Source: Lytechinus pictus
Taxonomy: Eukaryota
NCBI RefSeq assembly: GCF_037042905.1
Contig: NC_087257.1
Span: forward strand, 25,234,001 to 25,298,000
Direction of reading: 5' to 3'
Length of the DNA stretch: 64,000 nt
Position 1 is the first letter of the stretch; every line of letters begins with the position of its first letter. Position numbers and translations under genes: made by a program. The notes beneath the pieces were generated by a model. That model had not been told where the DNA came from. It worked only from the letters and a program-made list of their open reading frames with translations, and did no database searches. Shown here in pieces: positions 12,101-44,250 of this stretch.

Positions 12101-13939
12101 GACTGAAACTCTCCCTCTCGTCATGCTTGGAATTCGAACTGCAGTCAAATCTGATTTGGGATGTTGCGCTGCTGAACTGGTTTATGGAACAACTTTAAGA
12201 TTGCCAGGTCAGTTTGTAGCACCTAATCAGAATGATTGTGATTTGGACCCTAGCAACAACTACATACATCGACTGAGAAAACAAATGGAGAACCTCAAAC
12301 CTCAGCCTACTCGTGTCCAGAATCGCAAACCACAAGTCCACCCAGATCTCACATCATGCACCCATGTCTTTGTGCGTCATGATGCAGTCAAGAAACCCCT
12401 TCAACCACCCTACGATGGCCCATATCAAATTATCAAGCGAGCTGATAAGTTTTTCACCATCCTACTCAAAGGAAAGCATGAAACTATCAGTCTCGACCGT
12501 CTGAAACCAGCATATTTGGAATCACCCATTTCACCAACCGTTCCAACCACTGTTCAACCAAGCCTATCTACTCATGACAACCCTAAACCTTCTCAAGTGA
12601 CTACTACACCAACCACTAAGCCTCCGCCTCCCTCCATCACTCCTTCTTCATCATCTACCGAGCCTGAAATCAGACAAACTCGTTCGGGTAGAAAGGTGCA
12701 TTTTCCAAAGCGTTTTGTTCAAGTTTTTCATTTTAATTGAGAAATTATTTTCTTCATTTGGACTATTACTATTTTCTTTGTTATCGACCGTTTCATTTTA
12801 TTCAACGATCTAGGAGGGGGCTGATGTAGTATTTTCCAAATTTCATCCTACTTCATTTCTCAACTTTGCCTTCTATTACTCATCATCTTTGAGAGGACAT
12901 TACCCTTGGATACCAGTTACTTCCACTCCCTGACAATAAACATGTCAACAAGTGGTCAAGAATGCCCCTCAGCACAGCACACTCACCTGTGACTCACTAT
13001 AAATTCTCTGAATTGGTACCTCTCTCTCCCCTCTCTCTTTGTTTACATCCTACATCACATTTGGGATGAAAACTACTACTTTCTTTTCTGAACACACTTC
13101 TCAAAGTTTTCTTCTTCAGTAAACACGTGTCTTGAGAACGTCGTCAAATAACTTAATACATTTGTGGATTCCATCATCTCACTTGGAGCAAATTCATCCA
13201 TTGCATCTTCCACAGCATACCATTTCAAATTTGCGTACTACCCTTTTTTCTCCGTTATTTTCACTAAGAGAAAATCCAAATACCGCTTGTGCTAGCCAAG
13301 TTATTTTTTGTGATATAATCTTGTGTGATTTTGTGTCATTGGGATTGTGCAATAATTGGAACACTTTGTTATATTGGAGGATTGTCTGTCGGATCTCTAC
13401 ACGCATAAAGTCGGTAAGTGGAGATTGGCTTATTACCATTTCATCTTATAAACCAACCCCCGCTTCAATATTATTATATTAGGCCCTAAATGATATTTCA
13501 AAATAGATTATTTTTTTACTTTAGAATATGTTGAATGATTGTTTTCATTGGATAAATCGGCCGATAAATCTATGTTCAATTACCAAGTCGAGTTCAACTA
13601 ACGTTAGAAAAGACAAGTTAACTGTCTTAAGCCAAGGTCCATGCCAGTTGTACAAACTGCAACGTAAATTCTAACGACTGGGACTGAAGCAAGAATTTAT
13701 TCAAATTATTTTAATATTGGCGTCCTTACCCTTTCCGCATATTTCTGGGTCTCAAAAGCTCTCCTGTACCCCAATTCTATACGTTCATACTTCACGAGTG
13801 CTGTAATAAGAGTTCTCAATACATGAATTCGATCTGCAGGCCCGCTGGACATCCGCAGGTAATGTTTTATCTTAAATCTCAAACTCCTCATTTTTAGAGT
13901 TCTTCTCTTTTTCGGTTTGATTGATGGTGTCGGTGACAT
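6140..13939 (-). CDS. MRPL17: Mitochondrial ribosomal protein L17 (bL17m); exons 13939(or 13891)-13730, 7144-7076, 6532-6140
   Basis: Phase-0 GT-AG joins give ...[118 protein letters not shown]..., matching the MRPL17 motifs (HERIE, YAEKLI, ADFWL, KLFxVLxPR, EYxGNxxPPL). Length is 223 aa, or 207 aa from the second ATG. Confidence 0.93.
7415..7846. mobile_element. MITE/foldback built from short ttcgtaattccgaagg-type repeats
   Basis: The left half repeats ttcg(t/tt)aatccgaa; the right half carries the inverted ttcggaattacgaacc. Termini are tacacttcgtaattccgaagg ... ccttcggaattacgaatgta. Confidence 0.7.
7936..8578 (+). repeat. 5' LTR
   Basis: TGTAGTATTT...CCGCTTCA; direct repeat of 12825-13467 with 3 visible substitutions (8078, 8345, 8450); TATA-like ctataaat near 8108. 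Confidence 0.97.
8580..8599 (+). other. Primer-binding site complementary to the tRNA-Trp 3' end
   Basis: TGGTGACCCCGACGTGATTT lies 1 nt after the 5' LTR and is the reverse complement of the animal tRNA-Trp(CCA) 3' end ...AAATCACGTCGGGGTCACCA. Confidence 0.9.
8689..9552 (+). CDS. gag: Gag of the LTR element (DUF7041-type N-terminus, CHCC zinc knuckle)
   Basis: First ATG at 8689; [23 protein letters not shown]-terminal motif; C-terminal [18 protein letters not shown] (CX2HX9CX3C) as in the CsRn1/Kabuki/Boudicca clade. Confidence 0.9.
9465..12740 (+). CDS. pol: Pol polyprotein (protease-RT-RNase H-integrase), in the -1 frame relative to gag
   Basis: FLVDTGA (protease); MPFGL and YIDD (RT); VDAS and TDH (RNase H); H..H..CIQC, HIDLVG/TTDRG/GLVERF (integrase HHCC and DDE); PPYDGPY (GPY/F). 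The order PR-RT-RH-IN is Gypsy-type. Confidence 0.97.
12812..12820 (+). other. Polypurine tract
   Basis: AGGAGGGGG a few nt before the 3' LTR. Confidence 0.8.
12825..13467 (+). repeat. 3' LTR
   Basis: Direct repeat of 7936-8578, followed by the ATAT TSD. Confidence 0.97.
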
Positions 13940-22116: not shown

Positions 22117-24059
22117 AATGATGATGACGATGATGATGAAAAAAATCACCTCTTGATGTTTATTCTTTTCCACAGAGATAGCGTGTACGCTGTCGGGGGC
22201 TTCAACGGTCTGACTCGGCTAAACTCCATGGAGAGATGGAAGCCAGGCTCGATGCAGTGGATGGGGGCACCAAGCATGTACATCCACCGCAGCAACTTCG
22301 GCGTCGCTGTCCTCGATGATATGATCTTCGTCATTGGCGGCTTCAACGGCATCACGACCATCTACAATGTCGAGTGCTACGACCCCGACAACGATGAATG
22401 GTAAGTCTGATCTTGGTTGTGTGTAATCATTGTGTGCTAGAAGCTCGTTGTGCTTTACAAATCAGAATGCAGTCTGAGTTTGGAATTGATTTATTTTTAC
22501 TTTGATGAATTAACACTTTGGTCGGTAAATTAATTTTGAATGCTAGTATTGAACACGTGGCGAAGAAAGAGAAGAAAAAGAAGGAAGCAGAGTACTACAG
22601 TGCGTATCAGAAAAAAGTTTACACTTTGACAAAATCCAGTAAAATTATACATTTGTAATATCCTGAAGATTTTTCCACATTTTAACATTGGTACAGATCC
22701 ATTTAAGCAAATGACGATATAACTGTCGAAAAATATTTCCGCTTGAGTGAGCACCACTTACTTTTGAAAATTTAGTGAAAAATTATTTGCGCAGAACTTT
22801 GAAATAGTTATGCAAAAAAAAGTAGACCTTAATCATGAAGAACACGTGGAATTTAGCTAGTAAAATTGATTTGAAGATATCTTTTACCTTTTTAAACTTG
22901 TTTCCTTGCCCAAAACACTTCGAAGAGTGCATTGTGCCCCACCCCACTCCCCCACACACCGAGGCCATCGGGACGATATTTGCTTTACACTGAGCTGTGA
23001 TTTATATGAAATGGTTTAGGCTTGATTTTAATTTTGTTAATCATTGTCAAGCTTGGGAAAAGTGTGGAGAAACAAGTATTAAATGAAAAATGAAATGTAA
23101 ACCCACTTTAAATGATAAAAACTCAGTGAAAACATGCTGGAGATGTCTGATATAAACTTTTGTTCAGATTCAGTCATGTCCTCAGATCTAGCTCGCACAA
23201 AAAAGGGTAAAGATTGTGCTTACTAAATGTTGAAATATCAATTTGAGTGGCAAAATTGTTGCAAAATACTTCAATGTATCCGTTTTATTTCAATTGACTA
23301 AAAGTGCAAGGGAAATGTATGAGAAATGTTTCGCAGGGTAAGTTTGATTTCGCCCTTTCCCCTTGACACAGCGTGAAAACGAGCATTTCTGCGCAAACAG
23401 ATTTCTGCGAGCTTTACAAAAATGGACAGTGCTCACTCAAGTGTAACATTCTGTCATAACTTTTACTTTCATTGGATAGATGAGACCCAAACCAAAGATT
23501 ATATGTGAAAAATTTACCCACATGTTGTATATTTTTGAATTCCCAGGGCTTTTCCAAAGTGTAAACTTTTTTTTGATACGCACTGTATAAGAGCTAGGTC
23601 TGGGACGTGTAAGTCTTTACTACCCCTTTTAATCGATTGATAATAATGACTTCACCTTTATCTTGCCCCCCTCTGAAATTACTTTTGTGCAGCTCCTTGG
23701 ACTCAGGGTTAACTTATCTTTTAACGACATCCTATTTTTTCAGGTATGACGCATGCGACATGAACGTCTACCGGAGCGCCTTGAGCATCGGCGTCGTCTC
23801 CGACCTCCCTAACGTCCGCGAGTTCACCTGGCCCCGTGATCGAGACCTTCCACCTCCTGCCTTCGTGCCCACCCAAGCCTCACTCGAGCAGGCCGCCATG
23901 GCCATGGAGGAAAGCAACGTGACCAACGACGAACGCGTGCTCGACGACGAGGAGGATGACGAAGGCGGCAATCAGGAGGTGGCCGACGAAGCAGGTGAAG
24001 ACTACGGCGCCTATTCGCCTAGCATGTTCCCCATTCCACGAAACCTACGACGAAATTGA
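16147..24059 (+). CDS. KLHL10: Kelch-like protein 10 (BTB-BACK-6 Kelch); exons 16147-16483, 17018-17232, 18220-18368, 18992-19123, 19754-19985, 20711-20832, 21447-21668, 22176-22400, 23744-24059 (649 aa)
   Basis: All introns are GT-AG and phase-consistent (1950 nt). KLHL10-specific motifs: RPRLP..LFAVGGWSGGSPTSAIECYDTRADRW, YFNSVRCFDPV, MNSRRCYVSV, RSDASA, GGFNGNECL, RSNFG, GGFNGITTIYNVECYD..DEWYDACDMNVYRSALS. AATAAA at 24100. Confidence 0.93.
17505..17925 (-). mobile_element. L2-clade LINE 3' fragment in KLHL10 intron 2
   Basis: The minus strand encodes RVKFKILILVYHSVHGSAP...GRAFIHAGPSLWNSLPREIRDSKSVETFKIKLKT, the typical L2/CR1 ORF2 C-terminus, followed by an L2-like 3' UTR (ccttgagcatc...gcgct) and an (ATT)n tail. 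Confidence 0.85.
18405..18910. repeat. Degenerate (GAT)n/(GGT)n microsatellite
   Basis: Visible trinucleotide runs; they generate the poly-His/poly-Asp ORFs in the track. Confidence 0.9.
22028..22140. repeat. (GAT)n microsatellite
   Basis: Near-pure gat run in KLHL10 intron 7. Confidence 0.9.
22598..23585. mobile_element. Non-autonomous Tc1/mariner-type element
   Basis: TA|CAGTGCGTATCAGAAAAAAGTTTACACTTTG ... CAAAGTGTAAACTTTTTTTTGATACGCACTG|TA (TIRs and TA TSD). Confidence 0.85.
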
Positions 24060-24518
24060 AAACCTATAAAACCCCCCGCGTCTTTGTTATCAATGTATCA
24101 ATAAAGATGATCCATGTGTAATTGATAACCCATGTAATATTCAATTACACGTTAGAAAATACCACAAGATTGTCTGAAATTATGGACGTTACAGGACAAG
24201 AACGATTACGAGAACGCAATATTAATATAGAAGTATTTCGAGCATGTATTTTCCCTCACGCAAGGTAAGCGAAGGTTGTGCTACCGCGTTCTCTTCGCCA
24301 AAACAATGCTATTTTGTCTGAATAGCGCCATGAAAATGCAAAGGGTTGAGAGATGTATCGCCGCATATGTAGAAAGTGGGAAAGGCAATAGATTTGACTG
24401 TTCCATTAAATCCTATTGCGATATTTAGCGCTCTCGGGAACGTTCCCATCTTGTAACGTAAATGTCATCAATTGAGCAGGAGCACGTTGCCGATAGAAAT
24501 GCAATCAAACGCAACTTG

Positions 24519-24661
24519 TACCGTGTTTACACTTAATCGGCATTTGGTTCAGAACCAAATGCCGATGCAGAATCGGCATTTGGATTGCGTTTACACGTTG
24601 TTACAGCTCGCGGTTCAGAACCGCGAGCCGATTCAAATGCCGATTAAGTGTAAACACGGTA
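24519..24661. mobile_element. MITE with 3-bp TSD (Harbinger-like), short derivative
   Basis: TIR TACCGTGTTTACACTTAATCGGCA; TSD TTG/TTG; homologous to 30451-30870. Confidence 0.85.
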
Positions 24662-24911
24662 TTGATTGTCAATCAATCAGAAGCGCGTAATTTAATTTAG
24701 ACTTGCGCTTGACTTTCCGAGTTGTGTTCAAACGGAAGTCTTTGTGCAACAAGGCACACTGATAGACCTGAAAGCGGTTTTGCCTCCACTTGGTAATACA
24801 TTCATTGTTTTCAGCTTATGCTAGATATGTTGCACCTATTTAAAAATTAGGAAATCCCGCAGTAAAAAAATCCTGGATTTACAAAATCCTCTATTCTATT
24901 TATCTTTGCAG

Positions 24912-25174
24912 AAATTGATGAGTTTCTTCTCCAGCAAGCGGCTCTTGCGGAAGAGCACGCGAATAATGATGATTACGATGAGGAGGATGAGGACGAAGAT
25001 GATGAAGACGACGATGATGACGATGTTGATGGTGACGAGGTTGTTCAGTTTCCAGATCGATCACCAAATCCACGGAGACATCCGGGTCTCCTGCCTGGGG
25101 CAAGTCCATTGCAAACACCGCCTTTATCAGGGAACAATGAAGAAAGTGACAGAGAGGAACCGAGCTCGTCATAA
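24912..25174 (+). CDS. KLHL10: Candidate alternative terminal exon of KLHL10 (acidic tail)
   Basis: The acceptor tatttatctttgcag is phase 1 and matches the internal donor GCAG|GTGAAG after 23994. The exon is open to TAA: EIDEFLLQQAALAEEHANNDDYDEEDEDEDD...REEPSSS*. Confidence 0.65.
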
Positions 25175-25654
25175 AAAATATTGATAGATGAAAAATCGTT
25201 CGATAGCGAAACTGATCATGACTTTTAATGGCTGACAATTGTGTGAAAAAAATCCACATGAAGAAGTCTATCTTATTTCAAATACATTTACAGTCAATTG
25301 TAAAAAAATAAAATTAAAAAATTAAAATTAAAATTAAAAAAAGACTGGCCTATAATTTACCGAGCTAGGGGCTGACAAGTTCGTCAGAGCTATAAAAAAA
25401 CCAATAATAATACTTGTGTTTGGTTTTCACAGAATTTTGTATAACTTTCACTCAGTCATGGGCAAAATTAGGACGTGGGGTTAGGGAATCGATTATTTGA
25501 CTTCTGAAGTTGATTCAATTATTGGTAGAGTATCACTGATGGGCAACACTCGTCAATATGAATTCACGATTGCGCAGTTAATAGTTCATATTTTTCCCAA
25601 ATGCCAATTTAAAAAAAAATAGTTGGCGCGCAAATTTACCCTCCACATCATCGA

Positions 25655-30870: not shown

Positions 30871-30873
30871 ATT

Positions 30874-30925
30874 GTTGCCATGGTAAGCGCGTGACAGGTG
30901 CATGCGCAGTTAACATGCGCACCTC
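30874..30925 (+). promoter_or_regulatory. Candidate TMEM249 promoter: RFX X-box and NRF1-like sites
   Basis: GTTGCCATGGTAAG (30874-30887, one mismatch to GTTGCCATGGYAAC), then tgcatgcgca and catgcgcac; about 230 bp upstream of the ATG. Confidence 0.5.
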
Positions 30926-31111
30926 CCTCTTAATTTCGCAAGGTTAATTTTGCATGTGTTACGTAACACGTGCGGCGCTCGCGATCGCTAGCGCTAGCCC
31001 AGTTTGTCATGTGATTTGTATAGATAGCGTTAGTGTGAATGCATGTTTTTAAATCGTGTCAAGTTTTTATCTAATTCCATCATTTTTAAGAGAAGTTAGA
31101 ACATTGGAAAA

Positions 31112-34100
31112 ATGAAAAAGGAGATTGTTGGAATATTTGGAACCTGGGACCTGAATTTCTGGAGTCGACCAGAAGATGTTTTTCGAGAAAAACTTGAGGA
31201 GAATCACATTCACCCATTCACGGAGACGGGTCCAAATCGTAAGAAAAACGTAGATCTTGGTCTAGCTTTAATTTTTTTTCAGCTATATCTTAATGATACA
31301 TCTATCGTACATCTCAAGCCATTTCTTACTGAGGAAGGAGATCGTTTTGATCTCGTACAGTGGTGTAATATTGATAATAAGCCAAACATTTTGGATGTGC
31401 CAGGTATGATGGATGCAGAAAAACTACGGTATATTAGACATAGCCTAGTTAACGTTATTTCTTAAAAGCAAAATTTTTGACCTTTTCAAATACTAAATTC
31501 TAGATCTAATGTTTAGCTAGATTTTGACCTAGATCTAGGATCTAGTCCCTAACATTTGTAATAAGAACAAATTTAGAGATCAGACAGGTCGTCAGTCCGG
31601 AAAAGACGGACATGGTTACAAAAACTGTCTAAATATCAGGGGCCCGTTGCAAAAAAATGTTGCCATAAAAAAACTTTTTTTTGGCCAGAGTTTTTTAATG
31701 AGTACCGTATGGGTACTAGTATTCAACCCGGCATAATTCAAAGATTTTGACATATTCCCCAAAATATTGAGAAATAGGGAATTTATCTTAATTTCACACC
31801 TTTGTTATTTCCAGGGTAATCTGTTGTCGATATTTTCTTTGTCAATCTGTCGACTGTATGCGCGGAGGATCGAATTATGCGGCGATGGCCTTTTGCACTG
31901 AATGGTATACCCAGTTGTTGTGTGTCCGGACAGGTTGTGTGTCCGGACGATCAATTTTAGAAAGTCATTTGGAAAAAATTACAAGCGAAGTTTCATCAAA
32001 TTTTAGTACAAAATTTTAGAAAATATTATAGAGAACAAAATAGAAGATGATTACAACTATTGAATTCATATTTTTAGTGTAATCTTAAGACAAAAAAGAA
32101 GGCTTCAAAAATATAAAGTGTCCGGACACCCGATCCCCCATCCTACTAGTATTCAACCTAGTGAGGATTGATAGCAAATCTCAAAAGGGTTTAGATTGCT
32201 AAATTAGATCTAGATCTATGTAAATCTCTGGCTTTGATTAATTCCCTGTTTGGTCTCATCTCAAATGGTCTAGTCCATAGTCGGATGGGACAAGGGCAGA
32301 TTGAGAGATAGGGCCATCTTTCATCGCTAGGTTGAATACTAGTGCCGACGGGTTGAATACTAGTACCAAAATCCATCGCCGTATAATTCGATCGCCCGCG
32401 CACACAGTCAACTGGTTGAAGAAAAAAATAACGGAAAAAGAATAACCAGCATTTGCTCTTGGAAATAAGACGGGTCTGAAATTCAGGTAAATTCTATATT
32501 TCTATATATTTGAGGAAACTCTCCAAACGGGTTGAATACTAGTGCCCCTACGGTAGTACTAATTTTCAATGGCATAATTTTGTTTGCTAGAGTTTTTTTT
32601 ATGGAAAAGTTTTACGCAACGGGCTCCAGGTCGGAGTATTTAAAAATAAGATCGATTAATTGATGAGGTATCCACTCCATGTGTCACTGCAAAAAGTTGG
32701 CTAAGTCCCTTTATAGGTCAGTAGTATGGATTATTCACCTCGCTCTGATCGCTGGCATCATAATTACAAAAGCTGCTCAGATAGTTCATTTTGCAGGTTT
32801 GAATACATAAAATATCAAAAAACTTTGAGCTCGCTCTTGACACTAGCGCTATTCATTGAGAACATTTTTAGATAAAACGAATTAAAAAAAGTCAGTGTTT
32901 AGTTGGAACTATCCTCTCAGATAAAAAACCATCCACAAATATCTGCTTTTAGATTTGGTGTATTCTGGCCGATCGGTGAGAATACACCGCAAAAAGACTT
33001 TTACAACTTAAAATTTCTTCCCCCAGGTATACCGCTCGCTCGCGGAATAGTTATAGCCTATATATACACAACAAAAAAAGTAAGTCCCCCCCTAAATCAA
33101 ATTGCTGTAACTTTTGAACGGAATTATTTTGAGATATGATATTCCGTAGGTGGTTTTCTACACACATTAAGCAACTCCTGGGGAAAAATAAGATTGATCG
33201 GTTGAGTCATGCACGAGTAATTAAAGATTGAATTAAAAATGACCATTTTACTTTTGAACGGAATTATTTTGAGATATGATATTCCGTAGGTGGTTTTCTA
33301 CACTCATTAAGCAACTCCTGGGGAAAAATAAGATTGATCGGTTGAGTCATGCACGAGTAATTAAAGATTGAATTAAAAATGACCATTTTTGAAAGTCACA
33401 AGAGTCGTTTTTCAGATTGTGCAAATACAAAGTTGGGCAAATGTTGTCTTTAGGTGAATGTTATGGTGTTATGCTGTTTTACTATCCATCATTTAGCCAC
33501 TCCACACACAATTTTGATATAATATGTTCATGGTTGAGTGAGCATAATGTATTGCAGGGGCCGCGGAAGCGGGGGGGGGGGGCTGGGCGGGGAGCTTCAG
33601 CCCCCTCCCCCACTTTTTTCCAAAAGTATGTACAAAAATGTAAAAATGACCATACGATTGTGATTTTTTGCATGGTCAGCCCCCCCCCCCCCACTTTGAA
33701 AACCCTTCCCCGGCCCCTGTATTGTGACGTATCATCATAGGGGTTTATGGTAGTATCCTCTACAACTTGTTAGATCATGTTAAAATTTGAAAATGTTGGT
33801 GGCTCCCCCGATTATAGGCCCCTCCCCCATTTAAAAATTCTGGACCCACCACTGATTTGTCCATAAATTAAACTGATCATGAAAAATTGTTAGGAAAAGA
33901 ATACATTTATGCAGTATAAAGAGTATTCATTCCTAAGTTTTCGAATGTGCTCGCTCAACCATGAAAATGTTCAAAGTTCGGAAAGTGCGTGGTGATAGAA
34001 ATGATGGATGATAAAAACGATAGCAATTAAAGTCTTATTTGAAACCGAATTTGCCCCCAATATTCACTTCATTACCCTTTAAAATGAGTCTGTGACATTG

Positions 34101-37100
34101 AAAATACCAATTTTCCCACTTTGATGCGTGCTCAGTTTTTTGCTCAATCATCCATAAATAAACAAATCGATTTCATTTTTGCACAGAATTCTGCCCATAG
34201 GTATGAGGCGCCGAATGTACCAATATTATATAGAACAATTATTTGTTATATAATCATTATTTATTAAATAATAACTATTATTTATATATAATTTACATTT
34301 TATTTGTAAATAACTACTATTATATAAAATATCATTTCTAATTATTTATATATAATTCCAAGTAATACTTCATTATTTGTAAATAATAATAGTTCGACAT
34401 TCCATTATTTATAAATAATGATTATTTGTTTTTCATTATTTATAAATAATGATTATTTGTTTTTCATTATTTATAAATAATGATTATTTGTTTTTCATTA
34501 TTTACAAATAATGATTATTTGTTTTTCATTATTTATAAATAATGATTATTTGTTTTTCATTATTTATAAATAATGAAAAACAAATAATCATTATTTGTAA
34601 ATAATGAAAAACAAATAATCATTATTTATAAATAATGAAAAACAAATAATCATTATTTATAAATAATGAAAAACAAATAATCATTATTTATAAATAATGG
34701 AATGTCGAACTATTATTATTTACAAATAATGAAGTATTACTTGGAATTATATATAAATAATTAGAAATGATATTTTATATAATAGTAGTTATTTACAAAT
34801 AAAATGTAAATTATATATAAATAATAGTTATTATTTAATAAATAATGATTATATAACAAATAATTGTTCTATATAATATTGGTACATTCGGCGCCTCATA
34901 CATAGGTTGATAAACATTACTATTAAATGACATTGCTAAACACAGCCGTGAAAAAAAGTTCCACCATATTGAATAAAGGGTTACTTATTCTTAAACATGT
35001 GCACCCATAATGTACACAAGTCTATGAGAGACGAAGTCAACATTTTAACAAATATGAAATGAGGGTTTGTTTCATGGACGGTTTTTGTTACTTCTGCCAA
35101 TAGTTATTTCATGAAACTTCGTACATGGCTTCAGAGTAACACTATCCAAAAGGCGCGCACACCAAAATAACCATTTGATACGGCACAGAGGCCTTGAACT
35201 TTCTTCTCATTTGCATAATTTTTCAATATTGTGTGCTCACTGATGCATTAAACATCGGGATTTTCATAAAAATCAAATCAAATGAACTATGCAAGGAGGT
35301 TTGTGACAGATATCCATAGTAACAAATTGCATTTTTTCCAATAACGTAAAAAAGAGCTAATCGCATTCCACATGTTCATTCAAGCGTGGATATTTAATTA
35401 AACGCCTTTGAATCATTGAAGCAAATTAATTGGTCATGAACATAACGAAAAAGTTGAGAAAAGATCATTTTCAGTTCCCAAAATGAACCAATACTTGCCT
35501 ATGATATTTGAAAATCGAATTTTTTTTTTCAATAAATGTTCATTGAACCGTGAAACGATGAATATTGTTGAAGAAACTCTTCCAAAACTAACTGTCATCA
35601 TATTCTATCATTTTATTGATATAAATGTGTAAAAATCAAATTATAGCAAATTTGGACTTGTGTTTATTCAACCGTGAAATTTAGCCAAAAAAGTTGTATC
35701 GTCTTTTAGAGAGTACCTTTTACAAGCCTTCTGACTATTTTTTATGATGAGAATGTGGAATTAGTTCCAATAAAATGGAATCAAAGTCATGATATTTGGC
35801 TTGTGACTTTTGAAAAGTGACATTTTTGCCTTCTGACGGTGCTCACTGAAGCATGAAGTGAAATACGTCCATAACGTTTACCCAGAGGGTAGCTTATAAA
35901 ATTACCTACACGCTCATGTAAAAATATATTAAAAACTCGCATTGGTTCGGAAATTATTGATGTTTGTTTAAGGGGGGACTTACTTTTTTTGTTGTGTATA
36001 TATATATTGTATTTCATTATTTATAAATCCTCTTAAGGTGTTTCTCAACTTACATTTAGACGCAATACACAGCTACTTCTGGGTACCGTTTCATCAACAT
36101 TTTCGTCCGTCAAATTGTCAGGTCTGACAACTTTCCTTGATTATGATTGGCTGAGAGGCACTGTTACCATAGTAACTGTCGGATGAAACGTCTGACAAGT
36201 CCTTTCATGAAACACTCCCCAGGGGAGTGTTTCATCAACATTTTCATCTGACAAGTTGTCAGATCTGACATCTTTCCTTGATTTTGATTGGCTGTGAGGC
36301 ACTGTTACTATAGTAACTGTCGGATAAAACAGGACTTGTCGGATAAAACGTCCGACAAGTCCTTTCATGAAACGCTCCCCAGGTCATGCAGGTAGAAACA
36401 CATCTATTTGCAGACAATGCTCGGGGGGGGGGGGGGCTTTACCCCCTCCCTAACAAAAATTTATTTCATCGCCCCTGAAAAATGACATTGCTCTTTTCCA
36501 AATGTTACATAAAATGTTCTTATATTATTCTTAATTTGTTTCATTTCTAATATTGCGGCTTCTCGTATACTTACCATACTGCTATTACATTTATTTCTAT
36601 TTTCAAGGCTTTGAATACGAGTATCGTTCTCGGTGGTTTTCAATATTCCTCATTGCCATCATCCTCGAGGTCCTCGGTGTCTCAATGTGGTATGCCTGGG
36701 GAAACCCCGGGGTAAGTATAAAATGAAATCAAATAGTTATAACATTTGACCATTTTTTTAAAGACATCTGTTTGCAAAATGGCGATTTCTTTTGATGGTA
36801 GTTGAGAAGATCTAATTTTCTCAGAACGGACGAAAAAGTGTTAAAATTTGCCAATGTATTGCACATATATATATATATTTTTTTTTTTTACAAATGCAGA
36901 CGTTACCTTCAAGAAATTAACTATAAAGGGTAATTTTTGTTCGGTTTTTTCTGTTGGTGATATTAGCTTTTCGAATCTTTTGAGAAATGCTATCTTACAC
37001 AAAATATGGTCACGCGCGAATTATGGTCTCACCACCACAAATGAACATTAATTTTCAAATAAAAAGAATAACAAGAAATTGTTAAATATCTTTCGTAATC

Positions 37101-40100
37101 TATAAGGCCTTATCTACTTGAAACAAATAAAACATTGATGGGAGATGATTAGATAATTTTGAATGGCACATATATTTTTTTATGAGGGCGCCGTTGAAAA
37201 TCAACCAGTGAAAACTAGTGACAAAATGAGTTATGAGGATTGTGCTCAGGCCTTCTATAATAGATAAAATTTATATACATACTCTTTCACGGTTGGTTTT
37301 ATCATAGAACAAATTAGCATTCATGTGGTCTTTGATGATTGTATATTAATACGCCTATCTTATTACATGAAGTTTATTTATAATTTAACGCTCTTTAACC
37401 CCCTACCCCTTCCAGCAATTCATCTCTTTTGTGGTAGTGTTCTTCATCATCAGTATCCATCGTATTCACGCCCATAAGGACATGGTTAAAATCATCATCG
37501 ATTTGCACAAGGGAGAATACTACCTCATGAAGAAGGGCGAACTAACATACAGAGGCTTGCTACACAATATTTACATCAGACTGATTGGCCAAAATAGTGG
37601 TAAGCACTTGCGTAGACTTGTTTAACGTAGTAGCTGTTTAACCCTAAAAGGGTTGGGGCATCATGCCCCCCCCCCTCGACGCTTCGTGCGATATTTCCGA
37701 AACGCAAAAAGATAGCGCCGCAAATTTTTGAGACCATATTCGCGACATATTGGTAATAGCATCACGACGCCACGTGACTTTTTACAATGCCGTAAATGAC
37801 CCATTTTATACTTTGTGTATAAATTTGTACATTTTATTCATAATAAATAAAAATACTTATTTTCAGAATTAGTTTTTTTTTATACTTGTAGTTTATGTGG
37901 CAAAGAACGTGCGTGCCAAATTTCGGCGCGATCGTCTGAACGGCGGCCGAGATCAGAAGTTGGCCATCATGCCCCCCCCCCCCAGTCCTCAATACTTCTC
38001 AAATAGCCAAGTCCTTTTAGGGTTAAGAAAGGAAGTGTTTTTCAAAAGTGTACTTATAATCAGATGATCTTCAACCAACAACCGCGTAGCCAGGATTTCA
38101 TTTTGGAGGGGGCGGTAAATGCACGCGAAGCGTGCCAACACTTACAGAGCGCGCGAAGCGCGCTCCCTAGGGGGTGGGTGCAGGGAGGGGGAGTTTCCCC
38201 CTCCCGCGCGAAGCGCGAAGCTTTTGGTGTTTCATAAATTAAAATGAAAAGGAGCCGTCTCTCTTGTCTCTAGTACCTATATCAACTCCAATTCAGTTGA
38301 CTATATTGCGATTTGGAACCTTGTTTCCATGAACCTTGTTTTCAAAAGTGATTGTGAACGCACACAAAATAATAACCCCGCGCGAATCGCGGAAGCTGAA
38401 GCGTTTTATCAATTTTTTTTGCCATGAAAAGGGTCCCGAGTAAAGGTTATTCTCAATGATATATTGAATACTTCCCTTGGAAAGATCAGATTTCATTATA
38501 AACAATTTAGCGACAGTGCATATCTTTAACTCGCAAAACAGAGGAGAAGTGTATATGCCGGGAGGAAGATATTCCTCCCCGCGCAGAGCAATGAAACTCT
38601 GGAATTTCAAAGAGCGGACGTTTCATCAAATGCAGATATCTCTAATACCCCATCGGCTCTAATTCAATTGATTTTCTAAGATTATTGAACTTCATTACAA
38701 GGAAAATAGTGCGCAAAAAGTTGAAACTTCTGTGATTTATTGAAATTATATAAAAAAGGATGCCTAATTTCTTTGACTTATCCTGAAGTGCTTCATTTTG
38801 AGTTATAAAGAAACTTAAGTGTCATTCAAAATTTCAAACTGAGGGCGCAAAACAGGACAGGAGATGAATGTGCAGGGAAATGACATGAAGTTTAATAGAA
38901 TTTGATAAAAAAATATTGTTCTTTTTTAGTTAATACGACACGAATTTTATACCTTCCTCTTTTAAAATTAGGAACCTGTTTGCCCCAAAATTATGGTTGT
39001 TTAGTAATTAGCTGAAAAGTGGGAGAAGTTGACTTTATGGAGATGATGGCAGAAATTGATATAAAGATTTTACCCGAGCCGACCCGACCAGAAGTTGCGC
39101 GATCAATTAAAAAAAATAAGATAACTTCATATACTTCGGCCTAACCTTACTCTAATTCCATGCCCTAATGTATACGTTTGAACTTTAACTGGCAAGAAAC
39201 ACATATAGCTGAGGTAGAAAAACAGGGTTGGGAAACAATGGAGAACTTCAGTATTGTCATTTAACCGCGCGCAGCGCGGAAGCAAAATTCATATATAAAT
39301 TCAGAGCAAGAGTTTCTCTTTTGAGAAAAAAATAAAGAATAAAAAGAAAAAAACACAAAGCTACCTTTCTTCCCTTTCCTCCCTTTCCTTTCCTTTTCTC
39401 CTCTCTTTTTTCCCTTCTTTTTTTTTCTTTTTGGGGACGTTTTTTTTTGGGGGGGGGGCGACCGCCCCCATCGCCCCCCCCCTGGCTACGCGCCTGTCAA
39501 CCAAGAGTCCTCCTTTGACTGGTGTAATGATATGATATATTTTGTTAATGAAAAAAAAGAAGAAGAAAGAAAGAAAAAAGGGGAAAGGTATACAGTCACC
39601 TAAAGTTTGGGACCAAAGAGGGCACGTATCCCACCTCCCTCCGCCCCTTTACACTTCCTCTGTTTCCGCGCCTGATGTATTGTCACTAGGCGAGTTTATT
39701 GATGAAATTTGAAGTGGTTATCGTAAGCTCTACTCAACTGCCATCCAATTAGAATGCAGTACTGATATGACGTCGTATGCGTTCTTAAAGTGCACATGTT
39801 GTTTAATTATTTTTATTTATTCATTTTTTTAAGAGGGTGGGCATTCAGGCCATATCAATTTGTTATTCGTATATCTCTATGGTTAAGGCTTAAGACCATG
39901 TCGTATAGCATCCAAGCTAGCTCCGCATCAAAACTGCTGAAGTGTACAGTGCGTCCCCAAAAAAACGAAACCAAGATTTATCGATGATTTATCATATCTT
40001 AATCACAAATAAAATAGACAAATGACCTACCATTGTAAAGCTTAGAATCTCCTCTTTCATATAAAATTAATTAGTTTAATTTTCATTCACGCATGAGTGA

Positions 40101-42573
40101 GCAAAAACAACTTGAAGAGGGGATACCAAAAAGTCATTTGGCGGGCCGTATCTGGGTTTCAAAAAGAAAACCACATTTTTAAAAAGTTCAATATCTGCTC
40201 TTTAATTTGATACCTCAATTACAGAAAATGGTCAAGAAATAACAAAGTTCTGGTTATTTGAAATAAGGCTTGAATTTCAATAATTTCATAAAATGAAGAG
40301 GTTTTACAGGCTAGCGTTCAAACTCACTCGACACTCCGTTTTGTTGACGATCAGCCATGCATTAAGTCTTTTGTTAACCGTGCGATTGCGTCTGTGGGAA
40401 ACCGGTGAAAACACGTTTATTTAATGAAATTTGGAAATACAAGCATTGTTTCGAGGGAACATAACTTTTTTACTTCTTGACCATTTTTGTGATTAAGGTA
40501 TCAAATAAATGAGCAGATATTGAACTTTTTAGGCATGTGATTTTCTTTTTGAAATTCAGATACCCCCGCCAAATGAGTTTTTGGTATCCTTTCTTCAAAT
40601 TTGCTCACTCATGCGTGAATGAAAAATAAACTAATTAATTTCAGATGGAAGAGGAGATATAAGCTTTACATTGATAGGTCATTTGTCTATTGTATTTATG
40701 ATTAAGTTATGATAAATCATCGCTAAATGTCGGTTTCGTTTTTTGTGGGACGCACTGTATTATCCGGGCCTAATTGCTGCTTACTGGTGGTAGCTGTTCA
40801 CCTGCAATGCTAGTGACAAAGTCATCCATGAACAGAATGACTGTCTTCTTTATTGTTTCCGTTCGCTCCAGGTTCTGGTGAAATTTTCTTTAAAATTGTT
40901 TTGAACGGTCACGACCTTGCGCCTCAAGATTTAACCTCATCAGCGGTTCGAAAAGATGTAAGTAAAGTATATACCCATATCCATCTTTCACTATTCAGGC
41001 ACTTCCTGATCGAGGTATTTGAGTTGTTTAATGTGCTATCAATTCAATCTGAAATGAAAACGTGCTTCCATGGGGAAATGAAAATAACATTTTTTGGGGT
41101 TATATTTTTGTACTTTATCACTATTTGATTTTGTGTTTGATTCATTCGCAGTTTAGGAATGCTGTAGTATCACCTTCAGTTTAAAGAACCCAAATTAAAA
41201 GGAGAAGCAATAGTCCATTTTTAATCACACTATTGTTGTCTATGCGTTTTTATTGTTGTTATTTCACTTTAAAATGTCTTCTTGTTTTCTTTATTACACA
41301 GAAGCTAGAAAAATTGGGCCGTCGATTGGCAAATCGTCTAGGAATAAATTATTTTGACTGGACAGACAAATCTACACATCATATCCTTTTTACACTCATG
41401 TATTAAAAAATAACTTTAAAGGGATGTTAAACATTGAATGACATCATGTTCTGTCTATTTAGGTTAGGTCCTTTAGTTAATATTGCGGCATGAAAAACGT
41501 TAATATTGATTAGGTATACGCTTCATAGATTTCAAATCAATAAATTTAGACAGAACTTCCTTAATTGATACTTTATTTTATTGTCATTTTCATCGCTCCA
41601 ATCAAATACCCTTTTATTTCCCTCTTTGTATTCCCGCTGCGTACTGCCATGAAGGCATAGAACTGAATTCGTGGGAGTTATTGTTTTAATCTTCAACTAA
41701 TTGAGGGATATGGGCCCGGTAGCATAAAGATATGTGGTGAATGGCATATATGAAAAAAAAAACATTATAAAACTCAGTGGGATTTCTTGGTCAGTCTTTT
41801 TAACAAAGTGCGTATGCAACAATAATTTTGATTGGTCATGGCATTTAGTGACGTACCGTAACCTTTATGATACGAGCCCAAATGAAAACTTTATCATATA
41901 CATGTATCTGCATCGAATCGCTATACAGAGTGAGTCAGAAAAAAAGTGTCCAATTCGCTTTAAATTGTCTTGTATGAAGTATGAAAATGTAATCATTGAT
42001 TGATTTATAGGTTCCCTTAGAGTTATTCTCTCTGCATATTTCGTTTCCATTTGCATGTGGATATTTGCATGCATGACTGACTACGAGACAGTATCCAGGA
42101 GGTCGTAAAATCACGTAGTCAGTCATGCATGCAAAGATCCATCAGAATATGGTACCAAAATATGCAGAGGCAACGACTCTACCAGGGCATATCAATAAAT
42201 CAATGACTAAATTGTGCATATTTCACACAAAATAACTTTAACCGATGGGACAATATTTCTGACTCACTCTGTAGTTACAAATTACTTTGCGCATGACTGA
42301 TGACCCTTTCTTGTTAAATGATAAATTCATTTGTAGCTAACTTAGCAACTAAGATCATGTACCAGTCTTACGGATTTTTTTTTGTGGGGGGGGGGGGGGG
42401 GCTTGAGGAGACTTGCCACCCCCTACCCCGACGCAGAGCACTGTATTCATTTTTATGAATCTTAATTTAGGATTCCTTGACATATTATATGTTGTGCACA
42501 TGTTATTCGACACCGTTCACCCTACGCTTCTAGGTCGACCAGCACAATCAGCAGTGGAGATAGTGCTCTGTAA
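31112..42573 (+). CDS. TMEM249: TMEM249 / CatSper auxiliary subunit theta homolog; exons 31112-31238, 36608-36711, 37416-37599, 40872-40957, 41302-41380, 42500-42573 (217 aa)
   Basis: Phase-consistent 654-nt CDS: MKKEIVGIFGTWDLNFWSRPEDVFREKLEENHIHPFTETGPN-RFEYEYRSRWFSIFLIAIILEVLGVSMWYAWGNPG-QFISFVVVFFIISIHRIHAHKDMVKIIIDLHKGEYYLMKKGELTYRGLLHNIYIRLIGQNS-GSGEIFFKIVLNGHDLAPQDLTSSAVRKD-KLEKLGRRLANRLGINYFDWTDKSTH-HVIRHRSPYASRSTSTISSGDSAL*. It is colinear with recalled human TMEM249 motifs (PE..L..N..PF...PN.F..EY; two TMs; GPLHLVYVRL; FFHLVLGGH; LGRYIARKLNINYFD...S.RHVVRH). Confidence 0.85.
31705..32553. mobile_element. Non-autonomous Tc1/mariner(pogo)-type element nested in a Harbinger-like MITE (about 31638-32627)
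   Basis: TA|CCGTATGGGTACTAGTATTCAACCCG ... CGGGTTGAATACTAGTGCCCCTACGG|TA. Outer TIRs are ggggcccgttgc / gcaacgggctcc, flanked by cag. Confidence 0.75.
33067..35996. mobile_element. 2.9-kb non-autonomous TIR element (TA-flanked) carrying nested insertions
   Basis: TA|CACAACAAAAAAAGTAAGTCCCCCC ... GGGGGGACTTACTTTTTTTGTTGTG|TA. It contains a 140-bp tandem duplication (33110-33389), a CAGGGG...CCCCTG MITE (33556-33719, TSD TATTG) and the 34202-34900 palindrome. Confidence 0.75.
34202..34900. mobile_element. Palindromic (foldback) element, IS3EU-like termini
   Basis: TATGAGGCGCCG...CGGCGCCTCATA; 6-bp TSD CATAGG (34196-34201 / 34901-34906); arms mirror each other around 34551; internal 31-bp tandem units. 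Confidence 0.85.
36082..36380. mobile_element. Head-to-tail dimer of a Harbinger-like MITE
   Basis: Two related units gg...gtttcatcaaca...tcatgaaac(a/g)ctccc joined through cag, each carrying gttac(c/t)atagtaac and gattggc. A related copy lies at about 48066-48225. Confidence 0.7.
37642..38022. mobile_element. piggyBac-like MITE
   Basis: TTAA|CCCTAAAAGG ... CCTTTTAGGG|TTAA. Confidence 0.8.
38079..39496. mobile_element. Non-autonomous hAT element
   Basis: 8-bp TSD TCAACCAA (38071-38078 / 39497-39504); TIR CAaccGCGTAGCCAGG / CCTGGCTACGCGCCTG; gcgcgaagcgcg subterminal motifs. Confidence 0.85.
39947..40757. mobile_element. Tc1/mariner-type foldback MITE
   Basis: TA|CAGTGCGTCCC ... GGGACGCACTG|TA, with imperfect inverted arms of about 300 bp. 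Confidence 0.85.
41381..42499 (+). other. U12-type (minor spliceosome) AT-AC intron in TMEM249
   Basis: 5' end ATATCCTTT (41381), branch site TTCCTTGAC (42473-42481), 3' end ...TGCAC (42499). Splicing restores the conserved H-H-V-I-R-H motif. Confidence 0.88.
41926..42271. mobile_element. Tc1/mariner-type palindromic MITE inside the U12 intron
   Basis: TA|CAGAGTGAGTCAGAAA ... TTTCTGACTCACTCTG|TA, imperfect foldback. Confidence 0.85.
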
Positions 42574-44250
42574 TCATCATTTTGATTTTGGCGACGAAAT
42601 CGCAGCAGTGGGCAGATACAGGCTCACAATAATTGAACGTGGTGTAAAATCAACGATTTGTGAAGAGCGCCATCTCGTGACAGATATATGTTTAATGATT
42701 TCTTGATAAAATCATGCTCGTTGTAATTGTGATTATTCGGAGTAAATTAGTACACCACCCCTATCACCCGGCCCGTGGCTCGTACCAAAAACTAATTCAC
42801 GTTAATTTACTTGGGATCCCTTGAAATATACCTATTCAACGAAATCTAAATGATTTCATTGATTTTAAAACCTATAGCCTTGCCTATAGTCTCCTCTCTG
42901 TCTTCTTGTCTTTCCTTTCAAGTTGGCCTAATCATGGCCTGATCAATTCAATGATGAGACTTCATTTAAAATGAAAACTCGAGAAATATTTTGTCCAAAC
43001 ATTAAAGTATTCTGGATTATTAAAACAAGTTTTGTGTGTGAATTTATTTTCTTTTGCCTCCATTTTTTTATTGATATGATACATAATTATTTTCCCCCAA
43101 TTTTAAATATTTTTTAAAATAATCTTACATCATTTTGTATTTAGACTGTTAGCGACTTTTCTACTGATTCCATCAATCTTTTGCATTATTCTTGAAATTG
43201 CATCACTTAGCTTTGAGCCTATACTCTCAAAATTATCAATAATTTTATAGAATTTCTAGAGAAATAGAAGATTTTTGTAAAAATATATAAATGGCAAGGT
43301 AAGTAATATTTTGATAAGAAGCTTTCTACATGCATTTTAATAAGTAACTTGTATCAAGACATGTCCCTCTGAAAGGATATTTCTTTTAAGTAGATTGTTT
43401 TTAAGCGTGCATAGCCCTCCATGTCCATTGCATTATCCGCAACTCATTTTTTTCTGTTTTTATTATAACAAATTGAAATAAATCACAAAATTTACAAATG
43501 ATTATTAGGTGATTGCAAATCACATAAACACAAGTTAGTTACACAAAAAAGACAAAATAACAACCATAATAAAAAAAAACCTACCCACTTATCCTCCCCC
43601 ACCCCCCAAAAAAAAGAAATGTGGCAAAGTGATGACTTAATATCAGCGTTATCTAAACAAAGATAGGTGATTTGGTAAATAAAGTAGACAAAACAAAATA
43701 TACAAGCTATGATTATAACATGGTTTCACAACAACTATTGATAGGATTAAAAAACACAACTGGTTATTCAAGACGACATAATTATGGAGGTTTTTAAACG
43801 AACAAGTATATCAAGGAAACTGAGATACAAGTTGCATCATTATTTCTTCCTTTACGAAATCAACTTCATGTCTTTATGACAAAATACATCTTTTTCATAA
43901 TGTACAATATGAATATGAACATGCAAAATTAAAAATTATCATTTGAGCAAATGAAGATTCTCCCAATTTGGACGCAAACAAGATAAGAGGGAAGTAGAAT
44001 ACAGACAAAATAATGAATGAGATATTGAAAGGAGAGTGTAACGGAGAAAAGATATGCTAGAACGGAAACGGTCTTGGGGAAAAAGAGAGACAGTGGAAAA
44101 GAGATAGAAATAAATTGAGACGTAAGAAAGAGAGAGAGAGAGAGAGGGGGGGGGGGGGGAGTAGTGGGAGGGGGCAGAGCAAGGAGAGAGAGGGGATGAA
44201 AATGCATGGGGTGACATGAAAGAGGGTTTGGTATAGGTTTTCAAATTATG

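What the first reader, a model, noticed from the sequence alone, without database searches (positions are those of the whole stretch)
31112..42573. Hidden six-exon CatSper-theta (TMEM249) homolog
Seen: six short exons spread over 11.5 kb of TE-filled introns join in phase to a 217-aa, two-TM protein that the ORF track shows only as unrelated fragments. Established: TMEM249 (CATSPER-theta) is an auxiliary subunit of the mammalian CatSper channel, reported to be CUG-initiated in mouse, and CatSper drives Ca2+ entry in sea-urchin sperm chemotaxis. Inference: the theta subunit predates the echinoderm-chordate split and here uses an ordinary ATG, making it a candidate component of the sea-urchin CatSper complex.
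Basis: partly seen in the sequence, partly recalled or inferred. Interest (0 to 1): 0.7.

Follow-up and report, generated by a model that had tools for sequence, protein, structure and literature searches.

The report
Sea-urchin CatSper-theta (TMEM249) gene
The six short exons do join into a complete, conserved and transcribed sea-urchin copy of TMEM249 (CatSper-theta), a small subunit of the sperm calcium channel, but this gene is already annotated in other sea urchins, so only its unusual last intron adds anything.

Summary
Observation confirmed. Exons 31112-31238, 36608-36711, 37416-37599, 40872-40957, 41302-41380 and 42500-42573 (+ strand) join in phase to 654 nt, giving 217 aa with two TM helices.

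- **Family:** three exons hit Pfam PF15158 on their own. The spliced protein scores 267 bits against a profile of non-echinoid TMEM249-like proteins.
- **Closest relatives:** it is 86% identical to RefSeq "TMEM249-like" of S. purpuratus and 79% to that of Diadema.
- **Orthology:** the locus is single-copy and collinear with the S. purpuratus locus. dN/dS is 0.077.
- **Transcription:** RNA-assembly contigs join E2-E3, E3-E4 and E4-E5. Their depth arithmetic fits E5-E6. E1-E2 rests on homology only.
- **Last intron:** it is a U12-type AT-AC intron (ATATCCTTT ... TCCTTGAC ... AC). It sits at the same codon phase in S. purpuratus and a hemichordate, and is GT-AG U12-type in Diadema. The RefSeq models of S. 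purpuratus and Glandiceps read through it and carry wrong C-termini.

TMEM249-like genes are annotated across echinoderms, a hemichordate and an annelid. Huang et al. 2023 already showed Tmem249 co-evolving with CatSper genes across eukaryotes. An ATG start is shared by every relative compared here; CUG is described for mouse and other rodents. Membership of the urchin CatSper complex remains inferred.

The scan noted the AT-AC intron separately on this same window (s1-323485).

The parts
31112..31238 (+). Exon 1 (127 nt): ATG start and N-terminal cytosolic segment (M-K-K-E-I-V-G-I-F-G...), ending in phase 1; donor GTAAGA
   Evidence: One search gives the model and the in-frame stop 5 codons upstream; the N-terminus aligns with all relatives (VGIFG.W motif); conserved island against S. 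purpuratus, with the same 127-nt exon in S. purpuratus and Diadema. No read evidence here for the E1-E2 joint.
31239..36607 (+). Intron 1 (5369 nt, GT-AG), AT-rich and repeat-rich; the S. purpuratus counterpart is 0.8 kb
36608..36711 (+). Exon 2 (104 nt): first TM helix
   Evidence: contigs of X2, X3 and X4 join 36708>37415. The X4 contig's aligned length (about 101 nt) starts at the acceptor 36608.
37416..37599 (+). Exon 3 (184 nt): second TM helix and start of the cytosolic beta-rich domain
   Evidence: PF15158 35 bits, profile 62-124; joints on both sides (36708>37415; 37600>40874).
40872..40957 (+). Exon 4 (86 nt)
   Evidence: PF15158 16.5 bits, profile 123-151; joints 37600>40874 and 40956>41302 in X4.
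41302..41380 (+). Exon 5 (79 nt): KLEKLG...NYFDW..DKS motif, ending in phase 1 inside a His codon
   Evidence: PF15158 31.4 bits; 7eeb_J and 9ubw_J at E about 2e-3; the X3 contig of depth 4.4 gives bin depth 1.72, i.e. about 78 nt, and nothing in 41400-41599.
41381..42499 (+). Intron 5 (1119 nt): U12-type AT-AC intron with 5' site ATATCCTTT, branch-site-like TCCTTGAC at 42474-42481 (18 nt before the 3' site) and terminal AC
   Evidence: same site and phase in S. purpuratus and Glandiceps. GTATCCTTT...AG in Diadema. U12 and U6atac genes in this genome.
42500..42573 (+). Exon 6 coding part (74 nt): H-V-I-R-H-R-S-P-Y motif, Ser-rich tail and TAA stop
   Evidence: the motif is conserved in echinoderms, annelid and sharks; it aligns to HVVRHW of mouse TMEM249. 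X3 bin depth 2.22, i.e. about 101 nt from 42500; the conserved island 42495-42573 ends at the stop.
42574..42785 (+). 3' UTR, at least to about 42785 (inferred)
   Evidence: the 667-nt X3 contig leaves 451 nt downstream of E3, which is 86+79+286. That places its end near 42785. This is inference from record coordinates, not a mapped end.
40000..40760 (.). High-copy, partly self-complementary ~760-nt repeat inside intron 3 (an example of the TE-filled introns)
   Evidence: at least 2833 candidate copies, about 94% identity, and an 80% match on the opposite strand; contig depth in the thousands.

Best explanation
This is the single-copy echinoid orthologue of TMEM249 (CATSPER-theta, gene Catsperq). 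It is a 217-aa protein with a short cytosolic N-terminus, a two-helix membrane hairpin and a cytosolic beta-rich (PH-like) domain that ends in the conserved NYFD...S..HVIRH motif. It is transcribed and spliced from six exons. The first four introns are ordinary GT-AG introns swollen by repeats. The last is a U12-type AT-AC intron removed by the minor spliceosome. By homology with the mouse protein, it most likely binds the CATSPER4 pore subunit as a scaffold during assembly of the sperm CatSper channel and is needed for the complex to reach the flagellum. Shown here: the gene structure, family membership, purifying selection and splicing of E2 to E6. Inferred: testis or sperm expression, binding to CATSPER4 and membership of the urchin CatSper complex.
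For: - Pfam PF15158 is found on exons E3, E4 and E5.
- The spliced protein scores 267 bits against a non-echinoid family HMM.
- It is 86% identical to S. purpuratus TMEM249-like and 79% to the Diadema protein.
- The family profile hits solved mouse TMEM249 chains 9ubw_J at 3.4e-34 and 7eeb_J at 1.3e-32.
- This is the only locus in the 812-Mb genome that matches.
- The locus is collinear with the S. purpuratus locus, including the upstream BTB/Kelch gene.
- dN/dS against S. purpuratus is 0.077 over 217 codons.
- Spliced contigs from three studies join E2-E3. One contig joins E3-E4-E5. The depth arithmetic of a 667-nt contig fits E5 = 79 nt and E6 starting at 42500.
- U12 and U6atac genes are present, as is a CATSPERB gene. 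Bindin marks the genome as an echinoid.
- Mouse function comes from PMC10523455: scaffold for CATSPER4 and checkpoint for flagellar trafficking.
Against: - There is no protein-level or tissue evidence. The run labels are coded, so testis expression is not shown.
- TMEM249 is not among the CatSper subunits reported from sea-urchin sperm proteomes.
- The E1-E2 joint was not tested with reads.
- The E5-E6 joint row was not printed by the tool and is inferred from depths.
- The contigs differ from the window by about 1-4% in E3, so they come from other individuals or a close relative.
- The structural test used the Diadema protein (79% identical), not this protein.
- Mouse theta contacts CATSPER-eta, whose species distribution differs from that of the other CatSper genes, so the urchin complex may be built differently.
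Confidence: 0.9

Rival explanations
1. The gene is a TMEM249-family member, but in sea urchins it acts outside CatSper, for example as a general EROS-like assembly chaperone for another multi-pass membrane protein.
Confidence: 0.07
2. The major product ends in exon 5 by read-through of the AT-AC 5' site (...H-H-I-L-F-T-L-M-Y, 201 aa), as the RefSeq model of S. purpuratus does. Exon 6 would then be untranslated or spurious.
For: The read-through frame stays open for 8 more codons. The Pfam alignment tolerates H-H-I-L. RefSeq models of S. purpuratus and Glandiceps are built this way.
Against: The X3 contig has no depth in 41400-41599 and about 101 nt from 42500. Splicing restores H-V-I-R-H-R-S-P-Y, which is conserved from annelid to shark and mouse. 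Exon 6 and both splice motifs are conserved in S. purpuratus, Diadema and Glandiceps. The read-through tails of the three species are unrelated to each other.
Confidence: 0.04
3. The locus is a decaying or unexpressed relic (pseudogene) whose exons only look joinable.
For: The exons are very short, the introns are large and invaded by repeats, and no product of this species was returned among the database proteins.
Against: The 217-codon frame is intact, dN/dS is 0.077, spliced contigs come from several studies, and exon sizes are identical in three echinoids.
Confidence: 0.02

Closest known systems
Mouse/human TMEM249 = CATSPER-theta (PDB 7EEB chain J, 9UBW chain J; Huang et al. 2023, PMC10523455)
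   Different: Identity is only about 26-31% in the structural alignments. The urchin protein starts at a plain ATG, whereas mouse uses CUG. It has a Ser-rich tail after the HVIRHR motif. The gene carries a U12 intron inside that motif, which the skate (Rhinoraja) gene lacks; mammalian genes were not examined here. No functional data exist for any invertebrate member.
RefSeq 'transmembrane protein 249-like' of Strongylocentrotus purpuratus (P0009, 203 aa) and 'TMEM249-like' of Diadema setosum (P0008, 214 aa)
   Same: Orthologues: 86% and 79% identity, identical exon sizes (127/104/184/86/79), the same intron positions and a collinear locus.
   Different: The S. purpuratus model stops 7 codons into the AT-AC intron and lacks exon 6. 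Re-spliced like the window, it gives 217 aa ending in the conserved motif. Diadema has the same intron as the GT-AG U12 subtype. The introns here are three times longer in total (11.5 kb against 3.6 kb).
EROS/CYBC1 (PDB 8KEI chain D) and Ycf4, assembly chaperones of NOX2 and photosystem I

Membership tests
TMEM249 / CATSPER-theta (Pfam PF15158) | Matches the family HMM above the gathering score | tested here: met
   Single exons score 35 and 31.4 bits against a cut-off of 25. The 79%-identical Diadema protein scores 147.5 bits over profile 2-182 of 184, and all 17 relatives match. The spliced window protein scores 267 bits against my own HMM of non-echinoid members. The spliced protein itself was not sent to Pfam, because it has no reference and I did not type it.
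TMEM249 / CATSPER-theta (Pfam PF15158) | Two adjacent TM helices followed by a cytosolic beta-rich domain, as in chain J of the CatSper structures | tested here: met
   [not shown]
TMEM249 / CATSPER-theta (Pfam PF15158) | Conserved C-terminal NYFD...S..HV(I/V)RH motif | tested here: met
   The motif is present only after the AT-AC splice. It aligns to NYFDYLASSYRHVVRHW of 9ubw_J.
TMEM249 / CATSPER-theta (Pfam PF15158) | One-to-one orthology (single copy, conserved neighbourhood) | tested here: met
   Only this locus matches in the whole genome. The weak C12 and C16 Pfam matches (E 0.35 and 0.7) were not found with the protein query. The locus is collinear with the S. purpuratus locus, including the BTB/Kelch neighbour.
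TMEM249 / CATSPER-theta (Pfam PF15158) | Co-occurrence with the other CatSper genes in the genome | tested here: inconclusive
   CATSPERB_C exons were found on C15 (58.9 and 47.4 bits). The CATSPERG beta-propeller search was blank, but the tool warns that this shows nothing. The pore subunits were not searched.
TMEM249 / CATSPER-theta (Pfam PF15158) | Testis-specific expression, and physical presence in the CatSper complex next to CATSPER4 | not testable with these tools
   Run tissues are coded. No urchin proteome paper in the library mentions TMEM249.
U12-type (minor-spliceosome) intron, AT-AC subtype | 5' splice site /ATATCCTT, terminal AC, and a branch site TCCTTRAY 10-26 nt from the 3' end | tested here: met
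   ATATCCTTT lies at 41381, TCCTTGAC at 42474-42481 (18 nt before the 3' site) and AC at 42498-42499. The branch-site distance range is from my own knowledge of U12 introns.
U12-type (minor-spliceosome) intron, AT-AC subtype | Conserved position and motif in relatives | tested here: met
   S. purpuratus (ATATCCTTT...CTCCTTGAC...CAC) and the hemichordate Glandiceps (ATATCCTTT...CAC) share the same phase-1 His codon. Diadema has GTATCCTTT...TTCCTGAAC...CAG. The intron is absent in Antedon, Patiria, Amphiura, Owenia and Rhinoraja.
U12-type (minor-spliceosome) intron, AT-AC subtype | Actually spliced at these sites; minor spliceosome present | tested here: inconclusive
   U12 (4 loci above 109 bits) and U6atac (2 loci) are present. 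The contig depths fit 41380>42500 exactly, but the joint row itself was among those not printed.

The most novel reading that the evidence does not exclude
TMEM249/CATSPER-theta may belong with EROS (CYBC1) and Ycf4 to one ancient class of assembly chaperones built from a two-TM hairpin and a PH-like domain. That would explain mechanistically why theta scaffolds CATSPER4 and gates export of the channel. In ambulacrarians its most conserved motif is split by an ancestral U12 intron that gene predictors miss. No paper in the searched library links TMEM249 with EROS or CatSper with Ycf4.
Probability: 0.3. Interest if true: 0.5.

Novelty: already known. Interest (0 to 1): 0.22.

Why it matters
The finding gives a correct full-length sequence for the echinoid theta subunit. 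That sequence can be used to search sea-urchin sperm flagellar proteomes. [quoted passage not shown] Sea urchin is the main non-mammalian model for CatSper-driven chemotaxis, so knowing that theta is present, conserved (dN/dS 0.08) and transcribed makes the question "is the assembly checkpoint ancient?" testable.

The practical by-product is an annotation correction. Two RefSeq models, S. purpuratus and Glandiceps, end in read-through of an AT-AC intron and lack the conserved C-terminal motif. The existence of the gene in echinoderms and its ancient origin are not new.

Tried and rejected
1. My first 3' model used GT-AG sites (E5 to 41399, E6 from 42534, giving 212 aa). I rejected it because homologues carry H-V-I-R-H-R right after K-S-T-.-H and the contig depths give 79 and about 101 nt.
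2. A 44-nt "intron" inside the first long ORF (31239-31282) breaks the frame, and the downstream part of that ORF is not conserved.
3. phmmer of E3 alone against PDB gave no hit. For the E5 piece the top hits were mollusc hemocyanins, through a Y-[FW]-D-W-T word repeated in each hemocyanin unit. I treat these as chance; TMEM249 chains followed at E about 2e-3.
4. The 1.84-billion-protein search with the 61-aa E3 gave only two hits, because the query was too short. One of them, the Antedon protein, opened up the family.
5. The weak PF15158 matches on C12 and C16 were not confirmed with the Diadema protein.
6. The CATSPERG Pfam search of the genome was blank and is uninformative.
7. No locus is on record for the Apostichopus protein.
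8. EROS homology: only one 42-residue exon match to PF15169 exists in this genome. That was too little to build an EROS alignment for a profile-profile test, so the resemblance stays at fold level.
10. The species was not identified, because run and organism names are coded.

Full report
**What is there.** On the + strand, six short exons join in phase to a 654-nt reading frame of 217 codons plus TAA: 31112-31238, 36608-36711, 37416-37599, 40872-40957, 41302-41380 and 42500-42573. Introns 1 to 4 have GTAAG donors and pyrimidine-rich AG acceptors. An in-frame stop lies five codons upstream of the ATG. Hydropathy gives two adjacent TM segments at residues 52-74 and 78-96.

**How I reached the 3' end.** I first built a GT-AG version of the last intron, which gave 212 aa. 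That version gives 217 aa and turned out to be right, as shown below.

**Family membership.**
- Three exons hit Pfam PF15158 (TMEM249) in the correct profile order: E3 at 35 bits (profile 62-124), E4 at 16.5 bits (123-151) and E5 at 31.4 bits (151-180). The cut-off is 25.
- A six-frame search of the whole 812-Mb genome finds no other locus above the cut-off. A search with the Diadema protein finds only this locus.
- A search of 1.84 billion representatives with E3 returned a crinoid protein named TMEM249-like. Used as a query, it returned 17 proteins, all carrying PF15158. They come from Antedon, Anneissia, Amphiura, Patiria, Apostichopus, Diadema setosum, Strongylocentrotus purpuratus, the annelid Owenia, the hemichordate Glandiceps and three cartilaginous fishes.
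- The spliced window protein is 86% identical to the S. purpuratus protein over residues 1-196 and 79% to the Diadema protein.
- It scores 267 bits over residues 5-211 against an HMM that I built from the non-echinoid members only.
- A profile of the family hits the solved mouse TMEM249 chains 9ubw_J (E 3.4e-34) and 7eeb_J (E 1.3e-32). Both TM helices, the cytosolic domain and the C-terminal motif align.

**Orthology and selection.**
- blastn of the S. purpuratus locus against the window is collinear. The only conserved islands in the gene are the six exons, each within 25 nt of the predicted exon ends. The exons of the upstream BTB/Kelch gene (22163-25192) are conserved as well.
- The first five exons have identical sizes in S. 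purpuratus and Diadema; exon 6 is also 74 nt in S. purpuratus and 65 nt in Diadema.
- Nei-Gojobori dN/dS between the window and the re-spliced S. purpuratus coding sequence is 0.077, with dN 0.11 and dS about 1.5, which is saturated.
- A 237-bit bindin match marks the genome as an echinoid. It is not S. purpuratus itself.

**Transcription and splicing.** I had one run search and one laying of at most 6,000 bases, so I laid 36600-42599. All four runs are assembled contigs with coded labels.
- Contigs of X2, X3 and X4, from three studies, join 36708 to 37415. The two letters between are TC. Allowing for a Gly/Ser difference at the last codon of E2 (Ser as in S. purpuratus), this is the E2-E3 junction.
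- A 295-nt X4 contig joins 37600>40874 and 40956>41302. These are E3-E4 and E4-E5, each with one synonymous difference.
- The E5-E6 joint row was among those the tool did not print, but a 667-nt X3 contig of depth 4.4 settles it by arithmetic. Its bin depths are 0.66, 4.05, 1.91, 1.72 and 2.22. They correspond to 30, 184, 87, 78 and 101 aligned bases in the bins holding E2, E3, E4, E5 and 42400-42599. There is nothing in 41400-41599.
- That fits E5 = 79 nt and E6 starting at 42500. It does not fit read-through or my GT-AG alternative, which would give 66 nt. The same-depth contig carries two differences at 42550 and 42555, inside E6.
- Exon-exon joints can only come from spliced RNA, and the genome holds no retrocopy.
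- The E1-E2 junction lay outside the stretch. It rests on the conserved N-terminus (VGIFG.W...PF in every relative) and on the identical exon in two other urchins.
- The tissue of origin is unknown.

**The last intron.**
- Intron 5 begins ATATCCTTT, has TCCTTGAC 18 nt before its end and ends in AC. That is the U12-type AT-AC pattern. The consensus is from established knowledge of minor introns.
- Splicing restores H-V-I-R-H-R-S-P-Y. This motif is conserved from annelid to shark and aligns with HVVRHW in mouse.
- S. purpuratus has the same ATATCCTTT ... CTCCTTGAC ... CAC arrangement and a conserved exon 6. Its RefSeq protein instead reads on into the intron and ends after seven unrelated residues.
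- The hemichordate Glandiceps has ATATCCTTT at the same phase-1 His codon and a downstream exon encoding I-I-R-H-R-C-P-Y behind CAC. It too is annotated as read-through.
- Diadema has GTATCCTTT ... TTCCTGAAC ... CAG at the same place, which is the GT-AG subtype.
- Crinoid, sea star, brittle star, annelid and skate have no intron there.
- The simplest reading is an intron ancestral to echinoderms plus hemichordates, lost along with other introns in several classes, with one subtype switch.
- The genome encodes U12 and U6atac.

**How it most likely works.**
- In mouse, CATSPER-theta is a TM subunit that scaffolds CATSPER4 mainly through its cytosolic domain. Without it the other subunits are made but never leave the cell body, and males are infertile (PMC10523455).
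- It sits next to CATSPER-eta near the dimer interface. The 2026 dimer structure shows that the two theta copies do not touch (PMC12799140).
- The urchin protein keeps the hairpin, the domain and the motifs. [quoted passage not shown] A CATSPERB gene is in this genome.
- I therefore commit to the same scaffold and checkpoint role, at roughly 0.7 given that the gene identity is near certain. This step is inference: no urchin proteome or binding datum exists in the library.

**What is and is not new.**
- The gene's presence in sea urchins is already in RefSeq (S. purpuratus, Diadema).
- Its deep origin is implied by Huang et al. 2023, who found Tmem249 by its co-evolution with CatSper genes across 1,256 eukaryotic genomes.
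- The ATG start is the rule: all 15 full-length relatives begin M..VGIF or similar. The CUG is described for mouse and other rodents. So "ordinary ATG" is correct but expected.
- No product of this species was among the database hits. The gene may be unannotated here, but I cannot test that without the species name.

**Side lead.**
- The ESM Atlas lists a Ycf4 cluster by structure (TM 0.49) and a Cybc1_Eros cluster by features (0.89).
- No paper in the library links TMEM249 with EROS or CatSper with Ycf4.
- All three are two-TM plus PH-like proteins that stabilise a multi-pass partner during assembly. This is a lead for a profile-profile test, not a claim.

**Verdict.** The feature is real, and both the observation and the interpretation are correct. 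It belongs to a kind already known and already annotated in sister species, so interest is low to moderate.

Noticed in passing
L007:8950-9631 (S. purpuratus) and L013:9868-10400 (Glandiceps talaboti): The RefSeq TMEM249-like models of both species read through the AT-AC 5' splice site (...H-I-L...) and miss the conserved last exon (HVIRHRSPF... and IIRHRCPY...). Re-spliced like the window, S. purpuratus gives 217 aa.
   Followed up: yes
L008:6795-7412 (Diadema setosum): The same intron position carries GTATCCTTT ... TTCCTGAAC ... CAG. This is a U12-type GT-AG intron, so a subtype switch relative to the AT-AC form in the window, S. purpuratus and the hemichordate.
   Followed up: partly
[not shown]
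   Followed up: partly
window 40000-40760: A ~760-nt element in intron 3 has at least 2833 candidate copies in the genome at about 94% identity. It also matches itself on the opposite strand at about 80% (foldback/MITE-like). It is very abundant in the RNA-assembly contigs (depth 10^3 to 10^4).
   Followed up: partly
window 8650-12740: Two long open frames encode a DUF7041 gag-like protein and a protease-RT-RNaseH-integrase polyprotein. This is a Ty3/gypsy-like LTR retrotransposon with open reading frames. Observed only.
   Followed up: no
window 22163-25192: Exons of a BTB/BACK/Kelch gene are collinear with the gene upstream of TMEM249-like in S. purpuratus (72-86% DNA identity). A BTB/Kelch gene is also the neighbour in the hemichordate locus L013, on the other strand, which hints at old microsynteny.
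   Followed up: partly
window 34243-34341 and 34761-34859; 33124-33246 and 33264-33386: Intron 1 holds an AT-rich (GC 0.26) inverted repeat: the same 32-codon frame is read on both strands about 420 nt apart. It also holds a direct duplication with a 140-nt period.
   Followed up: no
window 36709-36711: The last codon of exon 2 is GGG (Gly) in the window but TCG (Ser, as in S. purpuratus and Diadema) in the contigs of X2, X3 and X4. E3 differs by 1.4-4.3% between the window and those runs, so this is a polymorphism or a sister species.
   Followed up: no
window 30873-30926: A 54-nt block about 190-240 nt upstream of the ATG is 82% identical to S. purpuratus. It is a candidate 5' UTR or promoter element.
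   Followed up: no
L011 (Owenia fusiformis), L009 (Patiria), L014 (Amphiura): The TMEM249-like gene is intronless in the annelid and has only one or two introns in the sea star and brittle star, against five in echinoids, so intron loss in this small gene has been strong.
   Followed up: partly
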